Counted from the stretch's first letter, positions 13,711-58,701 are shown. The stretch: 64,000 bases of DNA from IMGVR_UViG_3300031787_000001:1-64000, one strand, 5' to 3'. Numbers and translations are program-made. The notes: generated by a model from the letters alone, not told the origin.

Positions 13711-14199
13711 TTAATAAACAAGAATACAACGATCTGGTCTTAATCCACAATCAATTGATGCAATTTCATCTTGTTTGTAATCAAGTGAACCAAAATTTAA
13801 ACTTGTTATAAATGTACCTTGAAGAATCCATTTTTCAACAACAACACCTGTTGGGTCCAACATTTCTAATTCAATATCTTTTTTATAACCAGCAGCATAA
13901 CCCATACGACCTGTAACTGATTCTGCATGTAAACGGAACCACTCCATTAACGCCTGTGCGGCAGAAGGACCAATTGGGTCTTTAAATGTTACTTTCATCT
14001 CATCCCATGTAAATCTACCAGCAACATATGTTGAGGTATTTAAAAAAGGAATCTCAGTTGCATTTATTTTTGCTGATGGTCTCTGTGTTGATATTACATA
14101 CCATTCGTTAATTCCCAAAGACGAAGGGAAACGAAGGATAAACCTGTTCTGTCTTTTCGGTTCGTAAGGAACCGGCATTTTCATTAGTAAATCTGCCAT
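13711..14199 (-). CDS. gp19: Tail tube protein (T4 gp19-like)
   Basis: EPKRQNRF...QRPS...YVAGRFTWDEMKVTFKDP...EWF...GYKKDIELEMLDPTGVVVEKWILQG; directly downstream of the sheath gene. Confidence 0.9.
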   Translation of the reverse strand: MADLLMKMPVPYEPKRQNRFILRFPSSLGINEWYVISTQRPSAKINATEIPFLNTSTYVAGRFTWDEMKVTFKDPIGPSAAQALMEWFRLHAESVTGRMGYAAGYKKDIELEMLDPTGVVVEKWILQGTFITSLNFGSLDYKQDEIASIDCGLRPDRCILVY

Positions 14200-14484: not shown

Positions 14485-14503
14485 ATTTTTATCTCCTTTT
14501 AGA

Positions 14504-17335
14504 TTATATATTATCAAATGAAGCACCTGTTGGTGTTATAATGAACTCTAAATCAATAAATTCAAGAGAACGAGTAGGTTTAATATAGATTTTACCTCTC
14601 AATGTGTTAGCGTCAATATCTTCAGGGGCATTTGATACCGTAACACGGAAATCATAAAGACCTCTTTCTTTCTTGATTGCTTCCATTATTGGATTAACCA
14701 ATCTTAAGAATTCATTTCTTACCTGATCATCATTTTGTTCAAACAATAATCTAACGGCTACCGCAGATATTAATTTTCTTGCTCTTAATAATAATCTTCT
14801 TACGTTAATTCTATCAAGTGCAGATTCTCTAACTTGTAAGGTTTTATTACCCCAAATTATTGTACCTGTATCTGAGAAAGTCGCAATTGGGTTTATTCTA
14901 CCTTTGTAAAGAATGTCTCTTTCGTCCAATGTTAATTTCTTAACAGCTTTAATTGATTTAACTAAACCTCTTGAATAACCCGCAACCGCGAACCATGGAT
15001 AAGAAACATTATCAGTTAATGCTACATTTCTTAATACCTCACCTGTTGGTGGTATGTAAAGTTGTGTTGCATTATCACCATCTCTTACCTGTATCCAAGG
15101 CCAGTATGTAGCTGAATAGTTACTATCATAACCTAAATCATCTAACATACCAACAACTTCTTCGGCATCATCTACATTTGGTGAATTTATAATATATAAT
15201 GAATCGGCTCTTTCTTCTTCAACCATATCAATTGCTTGATTAGTTAATGAATTGTGATCATAAAAGTTTAGACCAGGCGTTGCGAATACATTTATATTTA
15301 CCGCCTCAGGATTTGAGAATGTTTCAATACCTTTTAGAAAAGCATAATAATCTGAGTTACCTTCAGTAGAACTGAAAACACCACCATTACTTTCCCAGTT
15401 TGACACATATGTATTTTTTCCAAATATGTATTGATCGGTGTTTGTTTTTACATTTCTGTAAATGTCCCAACCATCAAATCCACCATAAGCCGCGAATGTG
15501 AACTTACGGAAAGTTATATTTTCTAACTTATCTTTATTTAAACCTTCTAAATCATATGGGGTTGTTTTATATGTTATACCCGTAATTGACGCGGCGTTAA
15601 CAGATAAGTGGAATGCATATGTTGTTGTATCTTCTGAACTTAAACCTTTATATTTTAAAAGATCGTTATCATACTTGAACCCTTCTTGAGTTGAAAAACC
15701 TAAAGATACTTTTCTTGGTTTATCTCCATTTGTTGTGATTGGAGATCCGTCGGATTCATAACCAACGATATCACCCGCATCGAAGTATTCTGTTTTATAC
15801 ATTAAACTACCCAATATTGAATTTGTTCCGAAACTTGTGTTACTTGAAAAACCTTTGAAACCTGCGGGAATTGCATCTGCCGGTGCGTTTTCTTTCATCT
15901 CCAACATAATGAATTTTGATTTTAATTCATATTCACCATCACTCGTACCTAATTTTTTAGCAATATATCCCGGAACTTCAGGGTCCATAGAACATCTTGA
16001 ATATTTTTCAAGAGCCACTACATTTTCATCGGTATCATTAAAATCACGAACAAGTAAATCAAATTCTTTTGTATCTAAATTAATGTTAGCAATTGTAATT
16101 TTTACTTGTTGATTAGACGCTTCACCATCAGATATTGTGATAACATCAAAAAGATCTGCAACTTTACCACCACGAACTTCAGATACTACTGTTGGTGACA
16201 ATGCAGTACTCCATCTTTCCGCGAAATCGAGTTGGTCTAAATTATAAACATTACTAGTACTTAAACCTCTAATTAAACCTTGTTTATATAAATTTTTAAC
16301 TAAATTAGGATAAGACTCGTGAAGATATAAAGGGAATTCAACATAAGATTTATCAAATACAGAATTACCAATTACTTTACCAATATATTTTGAAGATGTT
16401 AAATCCATACTACATTGATATGATTTAAGACCACCGGTTAATCCATTAACACTTAATTTGAATTCACTTAAAGGATCAGAATCTAATGTAGAAGATGTGA
16501 TATTAACATTTGAAGAATTTGTCACTTCTAATGTTAAAGATTGACCAACATATCTACCTCTAGATCTTAATGCCGCAACAATAACATTCGAATAATCCGT
16601 ATTTAAAGAAGCAGGATACTTGAATCTAGTTACGGTAAATGTATTTCCTGTATCGGGATAAACAAATAAATAAGAATAAACACCATCAATTGTTGTATCT
16701 ACACCTGGAGTTGATTCAGTATAATAAACATTATACCAATTTTTACCATTGTTTGTACCTATTGGTGATGATATTGTTGTACCAGTTAAACCAGATACTG
16801 ATGAATTAGGAACAGGTCCAACTGTAAACCAGTTACCACCATTAAATGTTGTTCCACTTATATACTCAGGTATTGTAGTACCATCTGTTGTTAACTTATC
16901 TGATAGTTCAGTATAAAACGCACTTAATGTAACTGCTGTTGTTGACATTCCACCATTTGTGGTTGTAGGAGTTGCGGTTGTATCTACAGTAACACCACCT
17001 AATGTTCTAATACCAAAAGTGTTAAAAGGTCTGTAACCTGTTAAACCTAAAACTCTTGTTACAAATAATTGATTAGATTCTTCTAAATATGATTTTGCAA
17101 CATATCCTAATTCATATTTTGGATTACCATTACCATCTTTTTCAGGTGATGTTGTTCCGAAATATGTTCTAAACTCATCAAAACTTGTAATTAATACTGG
17201 TTCGAAAGCAGGTCCTTTTAATGTCTCCCCAACCAAACCCAATGTAGTTACACCAACACTTTGTGCAACAAATGTTAAATCTAATTCAGATGTGTACACA
17301 CCTGGTGACACGAATACTCTGTTTGAAGTTGCCAT
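14504..17335 (-). CDS. gp18: Contractile tail sheath protein (T4 gp18-like, 943 aa)
   Basis: FVSPGVYTSELD N-terminus; PWFAVAGYSRG, LYKGRINPI, IWGNKTLQ...SALDRINVRRLLL, IYIKPTRSLEFI C-terminal motifs. Confidence 0.93.
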   Translation of the reverse strand: MATSNRVFVSPGVYTSELDLTFVAQSVGVTTLGLVGETLKGPAFEPVLITSFDEFRTYFGTTSPEKDGNGNPKYELGYVAKSYLEESNQLFVTRVLGLTGYRPFNTFGIRTLGGVTVDTTATPTTTNGGMSTTAVTLSAFYTELSDKLTTDGTTIPEYISGTTFNGGNWFTVGPVPNSSVSGLTGTTISSPIGTNNGKNWYNVYYTESTPGVDTTIDGVYSYLFVYPDTGNTFTVTRFKYPASLNTDYSNVIVAALRSRGRYVGQSLTLEVTNSSNVNITSSTLDSDPLSEFKLSVNGLTGGLKSYQCSMDLTSSKYIGKVIGNSVFDKSYVEFPLYLHESYPNLVKNLYKQGLIRGLSTSNVYNLDQLDFAERWSTALSPTVVSEVRGGKVADLFDVITISDGEASNQQVKITIANINLDTKEFDLLVRDFNDTDENVVALEKYSRCSMDPEVPGYIAKKLGTSDGEYELKSKFIMLEMKENAPADAIPAGFKGFSSNTSFGTNSILGSLMYKTEYFDAGDIVGYESDGSPITTNGDKPRKVSLGFSTQEGFKYDNDLLKYKGLSSEDTTTYAFHLSVNAASITGITYKTTPYDLEGLNKDKLENITFRKFTFAAYGGFDGWDIYRNVKTNTDQYIFGKNTYVSNWESNGGVFSSTEGNSDYYAFLKGIETFSNPEAVNINVFATPGLNFYDHNSLTNQAIDMVEEERADSLYIINSPNVDDAEEVVGMLDDLGYDSNYSATYWPWIQVRDGDNATQLYIPPTGEVLRNVALTDNVSYPWFAVAGYSRGLVKSIKAVKKLTLDERDILYKGRINPIATFSDTGTIIWGNKTLQVRESALDRINVRRLLLRARKLISAVAVRLLFEQNDDQVRNEFLRLVNPIMEAIKKERGLYDFRVTVSNAPEDIDANTLRGKIYIKPTRSLEFIDLEFIITPTGASFDNI

Positions 17336-17375
17336 TGATTTTTCTTTTGATTAAAATATTTTTATTACTTTTATT

Positions 17376-17383
17376 TATAAATA
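17376..17383 (-). promoter_or_regulatory. Putative late promoter (AAAGA)TATTTATA of the sheath gene
   Basis: Recurrent motif, 40 nt upstream of the ATG. Confidence 0.6.
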
Positions 17384-17460
17384 TCTTTATTTTTACCAAA
17401 GATTTTTTTATCTTCAACATAAAAGATAGTATTCTATCCTTTATTATCTTTATTTATCTT
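17382..17460 (+). repeat. Array of TATCTT hexamers upstream of the RHH gene
   Basis: TATCTT at 17382, 17409, 17445 and 17455; TATCCT at 17435; inverted AAGATA at 17423. The last three direct copies are spaced exactly 10 bp apart. Confidence 0.5.
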
Positions 17461-17465
17461 TAGAT

Positions 17466-17624
17466 ATGGAAAAGAAAATAAAAAACATAAAAATTAGTGA
17501 TATTCACCACGAAATGTTAAAAAAACACTGTGATAAAAATGGTTTAAAAATTCATAAGGTCGTGGAAAAAATGATAGAAGAATTATGTAAACCAAAGAAA
17601 AAAGATTTATATGGTGAAACTTAA
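17466..17624 (+). CDS. 52-aa ribbon-helix-helix-like DNA-binding protein (below the ORF-track cutoff)
   Basis: MEKKIKNIKISDIHHEMLKKHCDKNGLKIHKVVEKMIEELCKPKKKDLYGET*: alternating beta-strand, helix, G-L-K turn and second helix. Its stop overlaps the stop of the convergent gene (TTAA 17621-17624). Confidence 0.7.
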   Translation: MEKKIKNIKISDIHHEMLKKHCDKNGLKIHKVVEKMIEELCKPKKKDLYGET

Positions 17625-18862
17625 TATGTGTAAGTTATACCAATTTTAGACCCAACAATAGGTGTAAAACTTAGTTCTACTGTATTTGTACCGGTAACAC
17701 TAAAACTTATATCATCACTTTCAATAAGTCCATTTATTGTAAATGTAACAATATCGTTAATTGGGTTAGATGTTGTAAAAATTAATGACGATCCGTCATA
17801 TGTGAAATTTTCAGTGGTAACTTGTAAAACAAAACCTTGATTGTTAACTAAAATTGCGTTAGATGTTCCTTTATAGTATGTTATTGTTATTACACTACCT
17901 GGTGGAGGCGGTGTAACAAAGGTTACTTTAGATGTTCCCGCAATATGGTAATAATCAACACCTAATTGTTGAATCAGACCGTTTATTGCAACATTAAATA
18001 ATATATCCATAGGTTCACCAACACCAAATATAGTCTGAATACCATTACCATATAATGTTGTGATTATTATGTCTATATTTTTTGGTACCACTTTTTTACT
18101 CATTTTTTTCGTATCAACAAATTCGGTTAATAAAATTGTTCTGTTAACCGCTGGCTTAACTTCAAATTCTTCAGCATCAATTAAAAATCCAAGTAAAATA
18201 AATTGATAGTTTTGAACATAAAATCTCCTACCATCAATTGTATCCATAGGTGTATTGTCTTCAATTCTTTCAAGAATTAATGGTACGTAATGTCCCTTTA
18301 TTGTTGTGTAATCTTGTCTTGAACTAAAATTTTGCATAACCATCTTATTAAATCTGTTCAAGTCTCTGAATTTATTACAAACAATTGTAACGTCATAACT
18401 AATATCTACAGGTATTGGTTGTGGTATTTTATATACATCAGCACCTAACATACCATTAGCATCTTGTTTTTTAACTGTAGAATAATGAAATCTATGTCTA
18501 TCGGGAATAGTCCTTAATACGGATGGATTTGTACCTGGCTGAACATCTGGTTTCCTAACTACAGAAATAAAAGGTAAATTTATGTTTCCCTCCTCATCAC
18601 TATATTCCCACGTATTTTGTAATTCCGCCCATCTTTGTATTGTTAAAATTCTTGGGATCATGGGTATTTTTTTACCATCAGAAACAACAACAAAATTCTT
18701 TTCAACATAATCTAACATACCTCTATCCAAATCATCATGTAAAATAGAATCGGGTAAGTATGGATCTGATTTAGTAATAAAATCTAACAACTCCTGTCTT
18801 CTCGGTAATAATTCTTTACCGAGATAAACTTGAATATTATTTTTCTTTTTAGGTATACCCAT
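17621..18862 (-). CDS. Tail terminator / sheath stabiliser (gp15-like) with two C-terminal beta-rich decoration domains
   Basis: Position between neck and sheath genes; PIPVDISYDVTIVCNKFRDLNRF core; likely start MGIPKK at 18862, just after the upstream stop. Confidence 0.55.
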   Translation of the reverse strand: MGIPKKKNNIQVYLGKELLPRRQELLDFITKSDPYLPDSILHDDLDRGMLDYVEKNFVVVSDGKKIPMIPRILTIQRWAELQNTWEYSDEEGNINLPFISVVRKPDVQPGTNPSVLRTIPDRHRFHYSTVKKQDANGMLGADVYKIPQPIPVDISYDVTIVCNKFRDLNRFNKMVMQNFSSRQDYTTIKGHYVPLILERIEDNTPMDTIDGRRFYVQNYQFILLGFLIDAEEFEVKPAVNRTILLTEFVDTKKMSKKVVPKNIDIIITTLYGNGIQTIFGVGEPMDILFNVAINGLIQQLGVDYYHIAGTSKVTFVTPPPPGSVITITYYKGTSNAILVNNQGFVLQVTTENFTYDGSSLIFTTSNPINDIVTFTINGLIESDDISFSVTGTNTVELSFTPIVGSKIGITYTY

Positions 18863-18863
18863 T

Positions 18864-19376
18864 TTAAACTCCTCTAAATTGACCTTCTTGTACAAATGCA
18901 CAAGTTATTGTTCTATAATGTGGTTTATAACCGAACATTTTATGTTTACCATCAGATGTCACTCTACCGTCATTTGTCACTTGATAGTATCTCATTTTAG
19001 TTTCAGATTCGGGATACCCCACATAATCACCATATTTTATATCTATTTTTAATTCGTCTAAATGTTTGATGTATACAGAAATTGTCATATTCCCGTGTTC
19101 ACTATAACGAATCAAACCCCCTTTATATGAATTATTTTTTGGTTCTTCTATTTTTACCAAAGCATTTATTTCAACAGGAGGAAAAAATTTTATTTCGTCC
19201 ATACCAACCTCACCATAAACATTGTCATTATCTGTTTTTTGTCTATCAACACGATATACAACTACTTTCATGTTCACATCACCATGTAAGTATTCCTGAC
19301 CCAATTCTAAATTGAAATCAAAATCTTCTTGAGAGAAAAACTTGGATAGTCTTGTTATAGGTAATTTATTGTCCAT
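18864..19376 (-). CDS. Neck / head-closure protein (gp14-like)
   Basis: VVVYRVDRQKTDNDNVYGE...KFFPPVEINALV...GDYV pattern typical of T4-like neck proteins; late motif TATTTATT at 19381-19388. Confidence 0.6.
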   Translation of the reverse strand: MDNKLPITRLSKFFSQEDFDFNLELGQEYLHGDVNMKVVVYRVDRQKTDNDNVYGEVGMDEIKFFPPVEINALVKIEEPKNNSYKGGLIRYSEHGNMTISVYIKHLDELKIDIKYGDYVGYPESETKMRYYQVTNDGRVTSDGKHKMFGYKPHYRTITCAFVQEGQFRGV

Positions 19377-19389
19377 ACCTAATAAATAG

Positions 19390-19420
19390 TTTAAAAATAC
19401 ATTCTATTTACTTATATTAG
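19390..19420 (+). promoter_or_regulatory. Bacteroidota-type early promoter candidate TTTA-N19-TATATTAG (helicase)
   Basis: Variant of TTTG-N19-21-TAnnTTTG; ends 5 nt before the ATG. Confidence 0.4.
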
Positions 19421-22252: not shown

Positions 22253-22284
22253 GAAATATAAGATATTTATAGTAAATAAACAAA
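22253..22284 (-). promoter_or_regulatory. Bacteroidota-type promoter TTTG-N20-TATATTTC
   Basis: One mismatch to TAnnTTTG with correct spacing; 6 nt before the ATG at 22246. Confidence 0.55.
22264..22271 (+). promoter_or_regulatory. Putative late promoter TATTTATA (neck gene)
   Basis: Recurrent motif, 15 nt before the ATG at 22287. Confidence 0.6.
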
Positions 22285-22286
22285 TT

Positions 22287-23405
22287 ATGGCGGCGACTAT
22301 TATAACACCGGAAGAAAAAGACAAATTATTTACCCAAGTTTTACACCTTTTAGGTATGCCAGTTAGAGGAGTAGAGTTAACTGAAGAACAAATGGATAGT
22401 TTTTTACAGCTGGCGATATCAGAATATGAGCAATATGTAAACGATTGGTTAATCGAATCACAATGGTCTGCATTGGCTAATTTGGACGTTGATAACAACT
22501 CATTAACAAGGGCATTTACAAATAGAAGTTTAGATTATGAAACTCAATACACTTACGCATATTCAAAGATAGTGGGGTTACAAGCAAACGGTCCATGGGA
22601 ACTTAAAAAAGATTATTTTGATTTAGTACAAAATCAACAAACATATGTAATCCCCGCAGGACGTGAAATTAATGAATTATTATGGTTTACAAGGGCCACA
22701 TTAACCGACTCTATTGTTGACCCATTTTTAGGTGGTTTTGGTGGTCTTGGGGGTGTTGCATTTGGTGGTGTCGGGGGTTTCGCACAAGTAGGTGCGTCAG
22801 GTTCTTATTTCTTATTACCCGCGTTTGACCTATTATTAAGAATGGGTGATAGGAATTTAAAAAATAGATTAATTGGTGGTGATTTAACATATAGAATAAC
22901 TGCAGGTCCAAATGGAACTAAAATAGTACACTTACTTAATGTACCGGGTGGTAAATTTGATTTTGGATCAATAAATAAAAATACAAGAGTTTGGTATTGG
23001 TATTATGATGCCGGTGACAATAGAGATGAATGTTTAGAGAAAAACAAAGATATTATCAGATTACCTTCAGATGTTATGACCGATCCATTAACTTGGGATG
23101 ATCTTAATAAACCTTCACAAAACTGGGTTAGAAAATATTTTATTGGTTATTGTAAAGAAGGTTTGGCAAGAATTTGGGGTAAATTCTCAGGTGACCTTAA
23201 AGTTCCTGATAGTGAGGTTAAATTAGATTACTCTTCATTACTTACAGAAGGTAAAGACGAAAGATTAAAACTTGTTGAAGAATTAATGGCACGTTTAGAA
23301 AGACTCCGCCCCGAAAAACTTTTAGAAAGAAAGAAAAACGAGGCGGAATTCCTTAATGGTTCATTGAAATTTAGAGCAATGCCAAGTCCGATCAATATTA
23401 TCTAA
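22287..23405 (+). CDS. Neck / head-tail adaptor protein (gp13-like)
   Basis: LGMPVRGVELTEEQMD N-terminus; NWVRKYFIGYCKEGLARIWGKFSG...LDYSSLLTEGKDE C-terminus, typical of gp13-family adaptors. Confidence 0.75.
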   Translation: MAATIITPEEKDKLFTQVLHLLGMPVRGVELTEEQMDSFLQLAISEYEQYVNDWLIESQWSALANLDVDNNSLTRAFTNRSLDYETQYTYAYSKIVGLQANGPWELKKDYFDLVQNQQTYVIPAGREINELLWFTRATLTDSIVDPFLGGFGGLGGVAFGGVGGFAQVGASGSYFLLPAFDLLLRMGDRNLKNRLIGGDLTYRITAGPNGTKIVHLLNVPGGKFDFGSINKNTRVWYWYYDAGDNRDECLEKNKDIIRLPSDVMTDPLTWDDLNKPSQNWVRKYFIGYCKEGLARIWGKFSGDLKVPDSEVKLDYSSLLTEGKDERLKLVEELMARLERLRPEKLLERKKNEAEFLNGSLKFRAMPSPINII

Positions 23406-31362: not shown

Positions 31363-31400
31363 GATTTTTTCTTTTTAATATAAATATCTTTTTAAATGAA

Positions 31401-33681: not shown

Positions 33682-33736
33682 TTTTTATTTTATTTATAAA
33701 TATCTTTAATTTACTATTTATTTTTTCATATTAAAT

Positions 33737-40622: not shown

Positions 40623-40652
40623 ATTTTAATAAATATCTTTCGAAACGTTTGA

Positions 40653-57934: not shown

Positions 57935-58375
57935 TTAATAAAAGATAATTTTAATATCACATTCATTAAGGAGTTCTAAACTCCTTTTTTGTTGCTCTTC
58001 CCACATCTCTTTATTGTTTGTTGTACAAACCTCTTTACAATAAACTGTTTTTATACCCGAGTTAACAATACCCCTTGCACAATCCATACAAGGTAAACCC
58101 GACGTAAGATATATTGTTGAATTTTTTAATGAAACACCTATTCTTGCTGCGTTATATATGGCATTACGTTCCGCATGTTCAAACCAGAAGTATTTTTCGG
58201 GTCTTTCCTGACGTTCTTCTTTTGAATCATATAAACCCCTTGGGAATGAATTATAACCTGTAGAAAGGATCTCATTATCCTCACCAACTATAACTGCACC
58301 TATTTGGGTGTATTTGTCTTTTGACTTTAACTTAACCTGTTCTGCGATCCCCAAAAAATAGTCTTTCCAATCCAT
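57935..58375 (-). CDS. cd: dCMP deaminase
   Basis: STGYNSFPRG, EHAERNAI, PCMDCA; start MDWKDYF is coupled (TGATG) to the upstream stop. Confidence 0.92.
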   Translation of the reverse strand: MDWKDYFLGIAEQVKLKSKDKYTQIGAVIVGEDNEILSTGYNSFPRGLYDSKEERQERPEKYFWFEHAERNAIYNAARIGVSLKNSTIYLTSGLPCMDCARGIVNSGIKTVYCKEVCTTNNKEMWEEQQKRSLELLNECDIKIIFY

Positions 58376-58701
58376 CACATTAATTTTTGTGGAGACCAAT
58401 ATTGTAATCTATTATCTGAATACCTATCCAATCTACGAGCCTCTTTTTTCTCGATAAGTTTATTAATTTCTGTCATGTGTTTTTTATTTCTAATATCAAC
58501 ACCGACAATGTATCCTCCGTCCGATTTTTCATATGTTGTTTCAAATATGAATTTACCCTCATCATCTTTTTTTAATAGTTCAACAATACCATTTTTGGTA
58601 TCATTTTCTTTCTTATAAATTTTGTAGGGAATCGAACGTAATTCAATTAACTTTTGAAGAACGTCTAATCTTAGTTTTTCGTATTCATTTTCATCTGTCA
58701 T
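58375..58701 (-). CDS. Hypothetical protein with a possible HeH/SAP-like N-terminus
   Basis: YEKLRLDVLQKLIELRSI...TKNGIVELLKKDD. Confidence 0.5.
   Translation of the reverse strand: MTDENEYEKLRLDVLQKLIELRSIPYKIYKKENDTKNGIVELLKKDDEGKFIFETTYEKSDGGYIVGVDIRNKKHMTEINKLIEKKEARRLDRYSDNRLQYWSPQKLM

What the first reader, a model, noticed from the sequence alone, without database searches (positions are those of the whole stretch)
17382..17624. Unannotated RHH protein with a helically phased TATCTT array, divergent from the sheath gene
Seen: a 52-aa RHH-like ORF preceded by six TATCTT-like hexamers, three of them at a 10-bp period plus one inverted pair. AAGATA (the reverse complement) also overlaps the late motif of the sheath, neck, 31362, 33681 and 40622 genes (AAGA-TATTTAT), and TATCTTTA lies beside the tube promoter. 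Established: RHH dimers bind arrays of short repeats cooperatively, both as autorepressors and as centromere adaptors. Inference: an autoregulated factor that tunes a subset of late promoters.
Basis: partly seen in the sequence, partly recalled or inferred. Interest (0 to 1): 0.6.

Follow-up and report, generated by a model that had tools for sequence, protein, structure and literature searches.

The report
Phage RHH repressor with operator array
A tiny, strongly conserved gene next to the tail-sheath gene of an uncultured freshwater jumbo phage encodes a ribbon-helix-helix DNA-binding protein, and the phased repeats in front of it are almost certainly its own binding sites; this is an ordinary kind of self-regulating switch, though well documented by comparison here.

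Summary
ORF 17466-17624 (+, 52 aa) is a real gene, with 40 protein clusters and more than 527 IMG/VR loci, always lying between the sheath gene and a convergent gene. All 41 family members tested give weak hits to RHH families (RepB-RCR_reg, ParG, omega). The AF2 model has the two RHH helices, and the top Foldseek hits are RHH proteins, though none is significant on its own.

Five exact TATCTT/AAGATA hexamers plus one TATCCT lie in 17382-17460. This is the densest cluster in the whole 286,785-bp phage record (0 of 200,000 simulations reach it).

The core array is AAGATA-N6-TATCCT-N4-TATCTT-N4-TATCTT (17423-17460). Among close relatives it keeps fixed spacing, with hexamers 94-98% conserved and spacers 70-80%. 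In two more distant clades every repeat in the array, including the inverted one, has changed together (TCTGCC/TCTACC; CATACT).

In some relatives a GIY-YIG homing endonuclease carrying a copy of this RHH domain is inserted exactly at the edge of the array.

Best reading: a self-repressing RHH bound to its own operator.

AAGATATTTAT is a common late-promoter variant even in genomes whose RHH has a different specificity, and no second array exists. Control of the divergent sheath promoter remains possible in this clade.

The parts
17466..17624 (+). Gene for a 52-aa ribbon-helix-helix protein. Predicted layout: strand about residues 5-11 (K-N-I-K-I-S), helix 12-25, helix 29-41, and a disordered conserved tail K-P-K-K-K-D-L-Y-G-E.
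   Evidence: ORF. 40 homologous clusters at 54-92% identity with invariant K6 N7 K9 H15 K19 C22 G26 K28 E34 D47 Y49. RHH family hits. AF2 model and Foldseek top hits.
17423..17428 (-). Inverted hexamer AAGATA, the first site of the core operator. It starts 43 nt before the ATG.
   Evidence: 98% conserved over 54 distinct loci of the clade, always 12 nt before the first direct repeat. In the other clades it is replaced by the reverse complement of that clade's own repeat.
17435..17440 (+). Direct repeat 1, TATCCT (one change from TATCTT).
   Evidence: TATCYT at this position in the clade, 94% conserved. TATCCT occurs here in 16 of 54 loci.
17445..17450 (+). Direct repeat 2, TATCTT, 10 bp after repeat 1.
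   Evidence: 96% conserved; the flanking spacers are 70-71%.
17455..17460 (+). Direct repeat 3, TATCTT, 10 bp after repeat 2. It ends 5 nt before the ATG.
   Evidence: 97% conserved where present. A subset of relatives lacks one 11-nt unit and has two direct repeats.
17409..17414 (+). Extra TATCTT copy, specific to this lineage.
   Evidence: Present in the window but not in related loci, which have an unrelated conserved stretch there.
17382..17387 (+). TATCTT that overlaps the upstream flank of the sheath late promoter. On the - strand the sequence reads AAAGATATTTATA.
   Evidence: TCTTTG or TCTTTA follows ATAAATA in 54 of 55 distinct loci of this clade, and the flank is variable in the other two clades.
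17376..17383 (-). Late-promoter motif TATTTATA of the sheath gene, 48 nt before its ATG.
   Evidence: (A)TATTTAT(A) is 8-fold enriched upstream of genes, mostly 11-25 nt from the ATG. Contigs from RNA libraries cover the sheath 5' part and stop at 17358 (contigs cannot prove a start).
17383..17403 (.). Inverted repeat ATCTTT(A)-N-(C)AAAGAT, upstream of the sheath late motif and overlapping it. It is ATCTTTG-N7-CAAAGAT in relatives, where TATCTTTG also fits the Bacteroidota sigma-A -7 box TAnnTTTG.
   Evidence: This is the most conserved block of the intergenic alignment, at least 95% in nearly every column. It is specific to this clade. Its function was not resolved.
14504..17335 (-). Tail sheath gene (943 aa), divergent neighbour.
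   Evidence: PHROG 23 tail sheath E=4.4e-61 and Pfam sheath domains. This synteny holds in all loci inspected.
17621..18901 (-). Convergent 426-aa gene of unknown function. Its stop codon overlaps the RHH stop codon, with 4 nt shared.
   Evidence: The same arrangement is seen in distant relatives.

Best explanation
The 52-aa protein is a minimal ribbon-helix-helix (RHH) DNA-binding protein of an uncultured freshwater jumbo myovirus. The host is probably a member of Bacteroidota.

Inferred mechanism:
- It dimerises through its N-terminal strand.
- One dimer binds each hexamer of the array AAGATA-N6-TATCCT-N4-TATCTT-N4-TATCTT (17423-17460).
- The 10-bp phasing puts neighbouring dimers on one face of the helix, so they can bind cooperatively.
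- Because the array fills the 43 nt directly before its own start codon, occupancy shuts off its own transcription (negative autoregulation).

Shown: the gene is real and conserved, it is RHH-like, and the array is non-random, conserved in register, and co-evolves with the locus.
Inferred: dimer-per-hexamer binding, cooperativity, and repression.

In this clade the nucleoprotein complex may also reach the sheath late promoter, which carries a further cognate hexamer 36 bp (edge to edge) upstream of the core array. I put this at about one chance in three.
For: Real gene:
- 40 clusters and more than 527 loci, length 49-54 aa, 11 invariant residues.
- Fixed synteny sheath(-)|RHH(+)|346-426-aa gene(-)|about 170-aa gene(-)|SNF2 helicase(+).

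RHH fold:
- All 41 members hit PF10723 RepB-RCR_reg (best E=4.9e-5), 14 hit ParG and 2 hit omega.
- PHROG Arc-like repressor, E=0.0013.
- A PDB profile search finds ParG (E=0.029 over the whole RHH domain) and the viral RHH repressor SvtR (E=0.072).
- AF2 gives helices 12-25 and 29-41.
- The top Foldseek hits are Arc, ParG, McdB, MatP, AvtR, NikA, omega and CopG.

Array:
- It is the unique maximum of the genome and is not reached in simulations.
- In 50 of 55 distinct loci of the clade the inverted-plus-direct layout is found, with offsets 12 and 10.
- Hexamers are 94-98% conserved against 70-80% for spacers, and the distance to the ATG is fixed.

Concerted change of all repeats, including the inverted one, in two other clades:
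- GGCAGA-N6-TCTGCC-N5-TCTACC.
- AGTATGA-N7-TCATACT-N3/4-TCATACT.
- The DNA-facing strand residues stay N-K-S or N-K-T, and the shared core of all repeats is CTT.

Promoter position: in those clades a late-type motif sits just upstream of the inverted repeat on the RHH strand. That holds for 11 of 16 loci in one clade and 10 of 49 in the other, so the array covers the expected start site.

Independent hint: in some relatives a GIY-YIG homing endonuclease is inserted exactly at the 3' edge of the array. Its C-terminal domain is 58% identical to the RHH and has the same strand residues.
Against: - No binding data exist.
- Every single similarity to RHH families is below curated thresholds (16.9 bits against a 21-bit cut-off for the window protein). 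No Foldseek hit has E below 0.4.
- The AF2 monomer shows no strand, and the dimer prediction gave no verdict.
- In the window's own clade no conserved promoter for the RHH gene could be identified. The candidates are a -7-like box at 17382-17389, which reads TATCTTTA here rather than TAnnTTTG, and non-conserved TATTTAT copies.
- No RNA contig covers the gene.
- The first 11 residues of the window protein are identical to those of P0040, whose array is built of CTACCT. The specificity determinants are therefore not explained by the strand alone.
- Self-regulation alone does not explain why the gene is kept at this place in hundreds of phages.
Confidence: 0.7

Rival explanations
1. Local dual regulator. 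Besides repressing itself, the RHH gates the divergent sheath late promoter, either delaying or damping it or activating it at low occupancy. It would do this by spreading from the core array over 17409 and 17399-17404 to the hexamer inside the promoter flank at 17382-17387, as described for the archaeal-virus RHH proteins SvtR and AvtR.
For: - The sheath late motif is flanked by the cognate hexamer in 54 of 55 distinct loci of this clade, while the same flank varies freely in the two clades with other specificities.
- The block 17377-17405 is the most conserved part of the intergenic region.
- The sheath motif lies unusually far from its ATG, at 48 nt against the usual 11-25 nt.
- The gene never leaves this position.
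- SvtR and AvtR repress their own gene and also regulate a structural gene, oligomerising along the DNA (PMC5569661).
Against: - The other two clades keep the RHH at the same place without any cognate site at the sheath promoter, so the ancestral role cannot depend on one.
- AAGATATTTAT is a common late-promoter variant in its own right.
- The hexamer in the promoter is 36 bp away from the core array, and the intervening copy at 17409 is not conserved.
Confidence: 0.3
2. One reading: the RHH tunes a genome-wide subset of late promoters that carry AAGATA fused to the late motif (sheath, and the genes at 22287, 31362, 33681, 40622 and others).
For: - There are 11 AAGATATTTAT sites in the genome against 1 for the reversed control. 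Most of them stand before genes, at late-promoter distance from the ATG.
- 11 of 26 GATATTTAT are preceded by AA, somewhat more than the pooled 20 of 98 in three genomes of another specificity group.
Against: - The same 11-mer is found at similar density in genomes whose RHH array is CATACT (0.022-0.024 per kb), in a second TATCTT-type genome (0.028 per kb) and here (0.038 per kb).
- Each promoter has a single hexamer, whereas RHH proteins need adjacent sub-sites for stable binding.
- No other locus has three phased sites.
- G at -2 and A at -1, -3 and -4 are general preferences of the late motif.
Confidence: 0.1
3. Non-transcriptional DNA anchor. The array is a unique cis site (centromere-like, or a packaging or positioning site), and the RHH is an adaptor whose conserved C-terminal peptide K-D-[LIVM]-Y-G-[ED] recruits a partner, as ParG and omega recruit ParA-type ATPases.
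For: - The array is unique in the genome.
- The best structure-database sequence match is ParG.
- The tail is disordered in the model yet D47, Y49 and G50 are invariant or nearly so. No other protein of the genome ends with this motif.
Against: - No ParA/CbiA-type ATPase is found in the 286-kb record, which is 86% complete.
- There is no T4-type clamp, and the DNA polymerase does not end in a similar peptide.
- The N-terminal arm that ParG and omega use to activate their ATPase is only 5 residues here.
- The array sits exactly on the gene's own leader, which is the classic autoregulatory position.
Confidence: 0.07
4. The repeats are not protein sites. They would be an RNA hairpin in the leader (AAGAUA pairing with UAUCUU), or a stack of promoter -7-like boxes (TAnnTTT).
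For: - The inverted element is complementary to the first direct repeat in all three clades, which would also look like compensatory change in a stem.
- TATCTTT resembles the Bacteroidota sigma-A -7 box TAnnTTTG (PMC9723704). TATCTTTG serves as the -7 box of some early promoters of this phage.
Against: - In 20 of 54 loci of the clade the six pairs are broken. Only one locus shows a possible compensating change (TAGATA with TATCTA), and it is not among those 20. This includes the window itself, which has an A-C mismatch.
- The leader folds no better than shuffles, z = -1.06.
- A stem does not explain the second and third phased direct repeats.
- The repeats of the other clades (TCTGCC, CATACT) do not resemble any promoter box of these phages.
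Confidence: 0.05

Closest known systems
Arc and Mnt repressors of Salmonella phage P22 (RHH, immI region)
   Same: Both are about 50-residue phage RHH proteins. Dimers bind adjacent sub-sites about one helical turn apart, giving cooperative, self-repressing control at a divergent promoter region. Arc is the top Foldseek hit, and PHROG 'Arc-like repressor' is the best PHROG hit.
   Different: No significant sequence similarity (E=0.0013 at best). Arc binds a 21-bp operator with two sub-sites. Here there are four hexamers (one inverted, three direct) lying on the gene's leader, inside the tail-gene block of a lytic-type jumbo phage. The conserved C-terminal tail has no counterpart in Arc.
SvtR (SIRV1 gp08) and AvtR (AFV6) RHH regulators of archaeal viruses
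   Same: These are small viral RHH proteins that repress their own gene and also act on a structural-protein gene, oligomerising along the DNA from high-affinity sites (PMC5569661). SvtR (2kel) is the third best PDB profile hit, and AvtR is among the top fold hits.
   Different: They work in the archaeal transcription system. Their sites are long imperfect inverted repeats, not phased hexamers. Similarity is marginal (E=0.072). A second target is not shown here.
RepB-RCR_reg (PF10723) and CopG-type plasmid copy-control RHH proteins
   Same: This is the only Pfam family hit by all 41 members. Size and beta-alpha-alpha layout match, and these proteins autoregulate by binding repeats at their own promoter.
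   Different: Scores are below the family's gathering threshold for the window protein (16.9 against 21 bits). There is no replication-initiator gene downstream: the gene is monocistronic and convergent with the next gene.
ParG (TP228) and omega (pSM19035) centromere-binding RHH proteins
   Same: They bind arrays of short direct and inverted repeats, each bound by one RHH dimer, and they double as autorepressors. ParG is the best PDB sequence match over the full RHH domain.
   Different: No ParA-type partner is encoded in the genome. There is no long flexible N-terminal arm. The repeat period is 10 bp with spacers, rather than omega's contiguous heptads.

Membership tests
Ribbon-helix-helix superfamily (Met_repress clan) | Beta-alpha-alpha topology in about 45 residues | tested here: met
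   AF2 (41-row alignment, pLDDT 74) gives helices 12-25 and 29-41 after an extended N-terminal segment. No strand is drawn, as expected for a monomer model. The first 16 ranked Foldseek hits are RHH chains, TM about 0.5, though all have E above 0.4.
Ribbon-helix-helix superfamily (Met_repress clan) | N-terminal strand with alternating hydrophobic (core) and polar (DNA-facing) residues | tested here: met
   K6-N7-I8-K9-I10-S11. N7 and K9 are invariant, I10 and S11 are at least 90% conserved in A1 (T at position 11 in one clade), and position 8 is always I, V or L.
Ribbon-helix-helix superfamily (Met_repress clan) | Conserved glycine turn between the helices (G-x-S/T/N), with the second helix N-terminus anchoring a phosphate | tested here: inconclusive
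   G26 is invariant at the turn, but it is followed by L/I-K (K28 invariant) rather than x-S/T/N. The motif itself is from my own knowledge of the family.
Ribbon-helix-helix superfamily (Met_repress clan) | Significant profile match to a member family | tested here: inconclusive
   PF10723 is hit by 41 of 41 members, with best E=4.9e-5; the window protein scores 16.9 bits against a 21-bit cut-off. ParG is hit by 14 members and omega by 2. PDB profile: ParG E=0.029, SvtR E=0.072.
Ribbon-helix-helix superfamily (Met_repress clan) | Obligate homodimer formed by strand pairing | tested here: inconclusive
   The two-copy complex prediction scored 0.39 against a mark of 0.42. The tool's verdict is 'no answer'.
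Autoregulatory phage/plasmid RHH repressors (Arc, Mnt, CopG, SvtR type) | Array of two or more phased sub-sites at the gene's own promoter or leader | tested here: met
   Four hexamers at offsets 12, 10 and 10 end 5 nt before the ATG. They are conserved in register and change together across clades.
Autoregulatory phage/plasmid RHH repressors (Arc, Mnt, CopG, SvtR type) | Sequence-specific binding and repression of its own transcription | not testable with these tools
   This needs EMSA or footprinting and reporter assays. RNA-library contigs do not cover the gene.
Type Ib partition centromere-binding proteins (ParG, omega) | Partner ParA-type ATPase encoded with it | tested here: not met
   No PF13614 or PF01656 match in the 286,785-bp record, while all 14 control genomes match. 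The record is 86% complete, so absence is not absolute.
Type Ib partition centromere-binding proteins (ParG, omega) | Flexible N-terminal arm that activates the ATPase | tested here: not met
   Only 5 residues precede the strand.
RHH antitoxins of type II toxin-antitoxin pairs | Toxin gene in the same operon, and a long C-terminal toxin-binding region | tested here: not met
   The gene is monocistronic, with the next gene convergent and overlapping its stop. The tail is 11 residues. There is no defence or toxin neighbour in any locus.

The most novel reading that the evidence does not exclude
The RHH would be a clade-wide, position-locked timing device of the tail-gene block in freshwater Bacteroidota jumbo phages. 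Bound to its array, it would use its invariant disordered C-terminal peptide (K-D-[LIVM]-Y-G-[ED]) to contact an unknown partner, for example the phage's late transcription machinery. In that way it would set when or how strongly the divergent sheath promoter fires. Its operator would be so dependable a landmark that a GIY-YIG homing endonuclease has copied the RHH domain to home to it.
Probability: 0.15. Interest if true: 0.6.

Novelty: new member of a known kind. Interest (0 to 1): 0.4.

Why it matters
- It gives a function to a small 'hypothetical protein' present in hundreds of uncultured freshwater jumbo-phage contigs.
- It marks a regulatory node beside the sheath gene.
- The three natural protein/operator specificity groups (TATCTT, TCTRCC, CATACT) have nearly identical DNA-reading strands. 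They make a ready-made set for asking how RHH proteins change specificity.
- The homing endonuclease that borrowed this domain would, if confirmed, be an unusual way of acquiring a target.
- The promoter motifs found on the way point to a Bacteroidota host and give a first map of early and late transcription for this phage group. These are Bacteroidota-type -33/-7 early promoters and a TATTTATA-type late motif.

Tried and rejected
- **Dimer prediction.** Score 0.39, below the 0.42 mark. The tool's verdict is 'no answer', so I do not use it either way.
- **Foldseek against PDB.** No hit with E below 0.001. I use only the nature of the top hits.
- **Searches of deposited phage genomes.** DNA of 14500-19400 and the 52-aa protein found nothing. 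The sheath protein finds only distant relatives, namely Microcystis phage Mel-JY01 at 32% and Flavobacterium phages at 38% over the C-terminus. No cultured relative exists for comparison.
- **Clamp-binding idea.** I considered that the C-terminal D-L-Y-G-E could be a sliding-clamp-binding peptide like those of T4 late-transcription proteins. This was a lead from memory. No T4-type clamp (PF02916) is in the genome, the DNA polymerase ends differently, and no other protein carries the motif. Dropped.
- **ParA-type partner.** None found.
- **RNA hairpin.** Rejected on uncompensated mismatches and z = -1.06.
- **Sigma-70 and terminator scan of 17200-17800.** Nothing above shuffles in the intergenic region. 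The scan does not cover Bacteroidota promoters.
- **RNA evidence.** Four metatranscriptome runs hold contigs only on the sheath 5' part (16644-17358), plus one on 17939-18151. None lies on the RHH gene or the array. Contigs cannot show starts, strands or absence.
- **My loose detector for the inverted-plus-direct layout.** It fires on 10% of shuffled sequences and 12% of other upstream regions. Only the identity of the repeat and the fixed offsets carry weight.
- **A second TATCTT-type genome for the AAGATATTTAT count.** Only one of four records was held.

Full report
**What is there**

The window is the first 64 kb of a 286,785-bp virus record, 30.5% G+C and estimated 86% complete. Around the finding lie these genes:
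- a tail tube gene at 13711-14199;
- a 943-aa tail sheath gene at 14504-17335 on the minus strand;
- a 130-bp intergenic region;
- the 52-aa ORF at 17466-17624 on the plus strand;
- a convergent 426-aa gene whose stop overlaps the ORF's stop;
- a 170-aa gene;
- an SNF2-type helicase gene on the plus strand.

TATCTT is at 17382, 17409, 17445 and 17455, AAGATA at 17423, and TATCCT at 17435.

**Is it more than chance?**

TATCTT is common in this genome, and its strand follows the direction of the genes. A count alone therefore means little. The cluster, however, is the single densest in the whole record: five copies in 80 bp, against three for the next best clusters, all of which lie inside genes.
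- In 200,000 simulated 130-nt sequences with the composition of this phage's intergenic DNA, none had five copies and two had four.
- Allowing any hexamer to be the repeated one, 13 of 20,000 simulations reached five.

**The gene is real and RHH-like**

A word-based search found 40 protein clusters of 49-54 residues at 54-92% identity. A scan of IMG/VR found more than 527 loci. Eleven positions are invariant in the 41-sequence alignment (K6 N7 K9 H15 K19 C22 G26 K28 E34 D47 Y49).

No single comparison with a known family is significant by curated thresholds, but all point the same way:
- Every one of the 41 members hits Pfam RepB-RCR_reg (best E=4.9e-5). Fourteen hit ParG and two hit the omega repressor.
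- The best PHROG is 'Arc-like repressor'.
- A profile search of PDB sequences finds ParG over the whole RHH domain (E=0.029) and the viral repressor SvtR (E=0.072).
- AlphaFold2 with the alignment gives two helices, 12-25 and 29-41, behind an extended N-terminus, with mean pLDDT 74.
- The top Foldseek hits are Arc, ParG, McdB, MatP, AvtR, NikA, omega, CopG, PutA and MazE, all RHH proteins, although none has E below 0.4.
- The strand K-N-I-K-I-S has the expected alternation of core and outward-facing residues.

A two-copy complex prediction fell just short of the tool's mark and counts for nothing either way.

**The array is conserved in register and co-evolves**

I collected 204 loci, which gave 120 distinct combinations of protein and upstream sequence.

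In the window's own clade the strand is K-N-[VI]-K-I-S followed by x-x-H-H, and there are 55 distinct loci:
- The layout AAGATA-N6-TATCYT-N4-TATCTT(-N4-TATCTT) is found in 50 loci, with offsets of 12 and 10 nt.
- The inverted hexamer starts 43 nt before the ATG when there are three direct repeats, and 32 nt when one 11-nt unit is missing.
- Hexamer positions are 94-98% conserved and the spacers between them 70-80%.

Two more distant clades keep the same layout but with other words:
- GGCAGA-N6-TCTGCC-N5-TCTACC.
- AGTATGA-N7-TCATACT-N3/4-TCATACT, with an 11-bp period.

In each clade the inverted element is the reverse complement of that clade's own direct repeat. All copies in a locus have therefore changed together. 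That is what one expects of sites read by one trans-acting factor. The three words share the core CTT, and the outward-facing strand residues stay N-K-S or N-K-T. This fits a conserved core contact with variable flank recognition.

One point is unexplained. The first eleven residues of the window protein and of P0040 (CTACCT array) are identical.

**An independent hint from a selfish element**

In some relatives of the CATACT clade (L126, L127, L168), a 149-154-aa ORF lies between the array and the RHH gene.
- Its N-terminal part is a GIY-YIG nuclease domain (PF01541, above the cut-off).
- Its C-terminal 40 residues are 58% identical to the neighbouring RHH (E=7e-16), including the strand, but without the C-terminal tail.
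- The inserted DNA begins immediately after the last repeat.
- L154 and L155 carry a decayed remnant, and L189 has a 19-residue remnant fused in frame to the RHH.

This looks like a free-standing homing endonuclease that copied the RHH as its DNA-binding module and sits next to the sequence that module would recognise. It is circumstantial, but it is the kind of evidence one would hope for if the RHH domain binds this array. I found no paper describing such an architecture in a limited search.

**Promoters, and what the RHH could regulate**

Two promoter types stand out in this genome.
- *Early type.* About 35 small genes at 140-167 kb are preceded by AAATTTGG, 20 nt, then TATATTTG. This is the -33 TTTG / -7 TAnnTTTG promoter of Bacteroidota sigma-A (PMC9723704). 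The host is therefore probably a member of that phylum; this is an inference.
- *Late type.* (A)TATTTAT(A) is 8-fold enriched upstream of genes and sits mostly 11-25 nt before the ATG.

The sheath gene has a late motif at 17376-17383 on the minus strand, unusually far (48 nt) from its ATG. Contigs from four RNA libraries cover the sheath 5' part and end at 17358. That is compatible with a start there, but contigs cannot prove it.

In the other two clades a late-type motif stands just upstream of the inverted repeat on the RHH strand. This holds for 11 of 16 loci in one clade and 10 of 49 in the other. The array would then cover the expected start site, which is the textbook geometry of autorepression.

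In the window's clade I could not identify a conserved promoter for the RHH gene. The candidates are:
- the -7-like box TATCTTTG at the sheath-proximal end, which reads TATCTTTA in the window;
- TATTTAT copies that are not conserved.

AAGATATTTAT does occur 11 times in the genome, against once for the reversed control. Several arguments count against it being an RHH target:
- G at -2 and A at -1, -3 and -4 are general preferences of the late motif.
- The 11-mer is found at similar density in three genomes whose RHH array is CATACT (7, 8 and 5 copies in 306, 362 and 206 kb) and in a second TATCTT-type genome (6 in 217 kb).
- Each such promoter has one hexamer only.
- A search for correctly spaced pairs found three consecutive pairs nowhere but at 17423-17455.

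I therefore regard a late-promoter regulon as unlikely (about 0.1).

The sheath promoter is a different matter. Its flank is the cognate hexamer in 54 of 55 distinct loci of this clade, and it is variable in the other two clades. It also lies in the most conserved block of the intergenic region. Local control of the sheath promoter is possible (about 0.3), in the manner of SvtR and AvtR (PMC5569661). It cannot be the ancestral reason for the gene's position, because the other clades lack such a site.

**Other rivals**

- *Centromere-type adaptor.* This role lacks its partner: no ParA/CbiA-type ATPase is in the record.
- *Antitoxin.* This role lacks a toxin gene and an operon.
- *RNA hairpin.* It is contradicted by 20 of 54 loci with broken pairs, only one locus with a possible compensating change, and an unremarkable folding energy.
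- *The invariant C-terminal peptide.* K-D-[LIVM]-Y-G-[ED] and the invariant H15, C22 and C41 remain unexplained. A clamp-binding idea found no support.

**Verdict**

The ORF is a new, widely distributed family of minimal RHH proteins in uncultured freshwater jumbo phages, and 17423-17460 is very probably its operator. This is a new member of a well-known kind of regulator, not a new mechanism.

Its interest lies in:
- the clean comparative evidence;
- the three natural specificity groups;
- the strict position beside the sheath gene;
- the homing endonuclease that has borrowed the domain.

Noticed in passing
L127:1042-1491 (also L126 and L168:1040-1504; remnants at L154/L155:1321-1428 and L189:1444-1653): There is a GIY-YIG nuclease domain fused to a copy of the RHH domain (58% identical, without the tail). 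It is inserted exactly between the repeat array and the RHH gene in some relatives, and decayed versions occur in others. It looks like a free-standing homing endonuclease that uses an RHH as its DNA-binding module.
   Followed up: partly
G000:C1:140900-167400 (outside the window); a window example lies upstream of 58375-58701: About 35 small genes are each preceded by AAATTTGG-N20-TATATTTG. This is the Bacteroidota sigma-A -33/-7 promoter, so this is an early-gene block and a pointer to the host phylum.
   Followed up: partly
window-wide, e.g. 31380-31390(-), 33696-33706(-), 40629-40639(-), 22260-22270(+): The late-type motif (A)TATTTAT(A) lies 11-25 nt before the ATG of roughly 60-100 genes of the genome. 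GATATTTAT and AAGATATTTAT are frequent extended variants of it.
   Followed up: yes
window 17336-17375: The sheath leader is unusually long (48 nt from the motif to the ATG). It contains blocks that are nearly invariant across the clade, such as TTGTTTGGTTAA on the plus strand. The purpose is unknown.
   Followed up: no
window 17383-17403: The inverted repeat ATCTTT-N9-AAAGAT (ATCTTTG-N7-CAAAGAT in relatives) overlaps the sheath late-motif flank. It is the most conserved part of the intergenic region in this clade and is absent from the other two clades.
   Followed up: partly
G000:C1:106194-106211 and 106495-106527 (outside the window): The only exact AAGATA-N6-TATCTT palindrome elsewhere in the genome lies inside an ORF. 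It is 300 bp from a back-to-back pair of AAGATATTTAT late motifs. It could be a second weak site or chance.
   Followed up: no
window 17621-17624: The RHH gene and the convergent 426-aa gene share 4 nt at their stops, so no terminator can lie between them. Transcripts of each would run antisense into the other. The arrangement is kept in distant relatives.
   Followed up: no
window 17466-17624 (protein residues 15, 22, 41, 42-52): H15, C22 and C41 are invariant or nearly so. There is also a disordered but conserved C-terminal peptide K-D-[LIVM]-Y-G-[ED], found in no other protein of the genome. This suggests a partner or a metal or redox feature not typical of minimal RHH proteins.
   Followed up: partly
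window 16644-17358 and 17939-18151: Contigs from four freshwater metatranscriptome libraries match the sheath 5' part, some exactly and some at 90-97% (relatives). The one reaching furthest upstream ends at 17358. The same DNA is held by metagenomes of 17 studies, labelled freshwater, lake water or, oddly, 'fungus metagenome'.
   Followed up: partly
G000:C1:86026-86545 (outside the window): The hexamer GTTCGA is repeated six times in a stretch without ORFs. It is likely a tRNA gene cluster (T-arm sequence). This was not checked.
   Followed up: no
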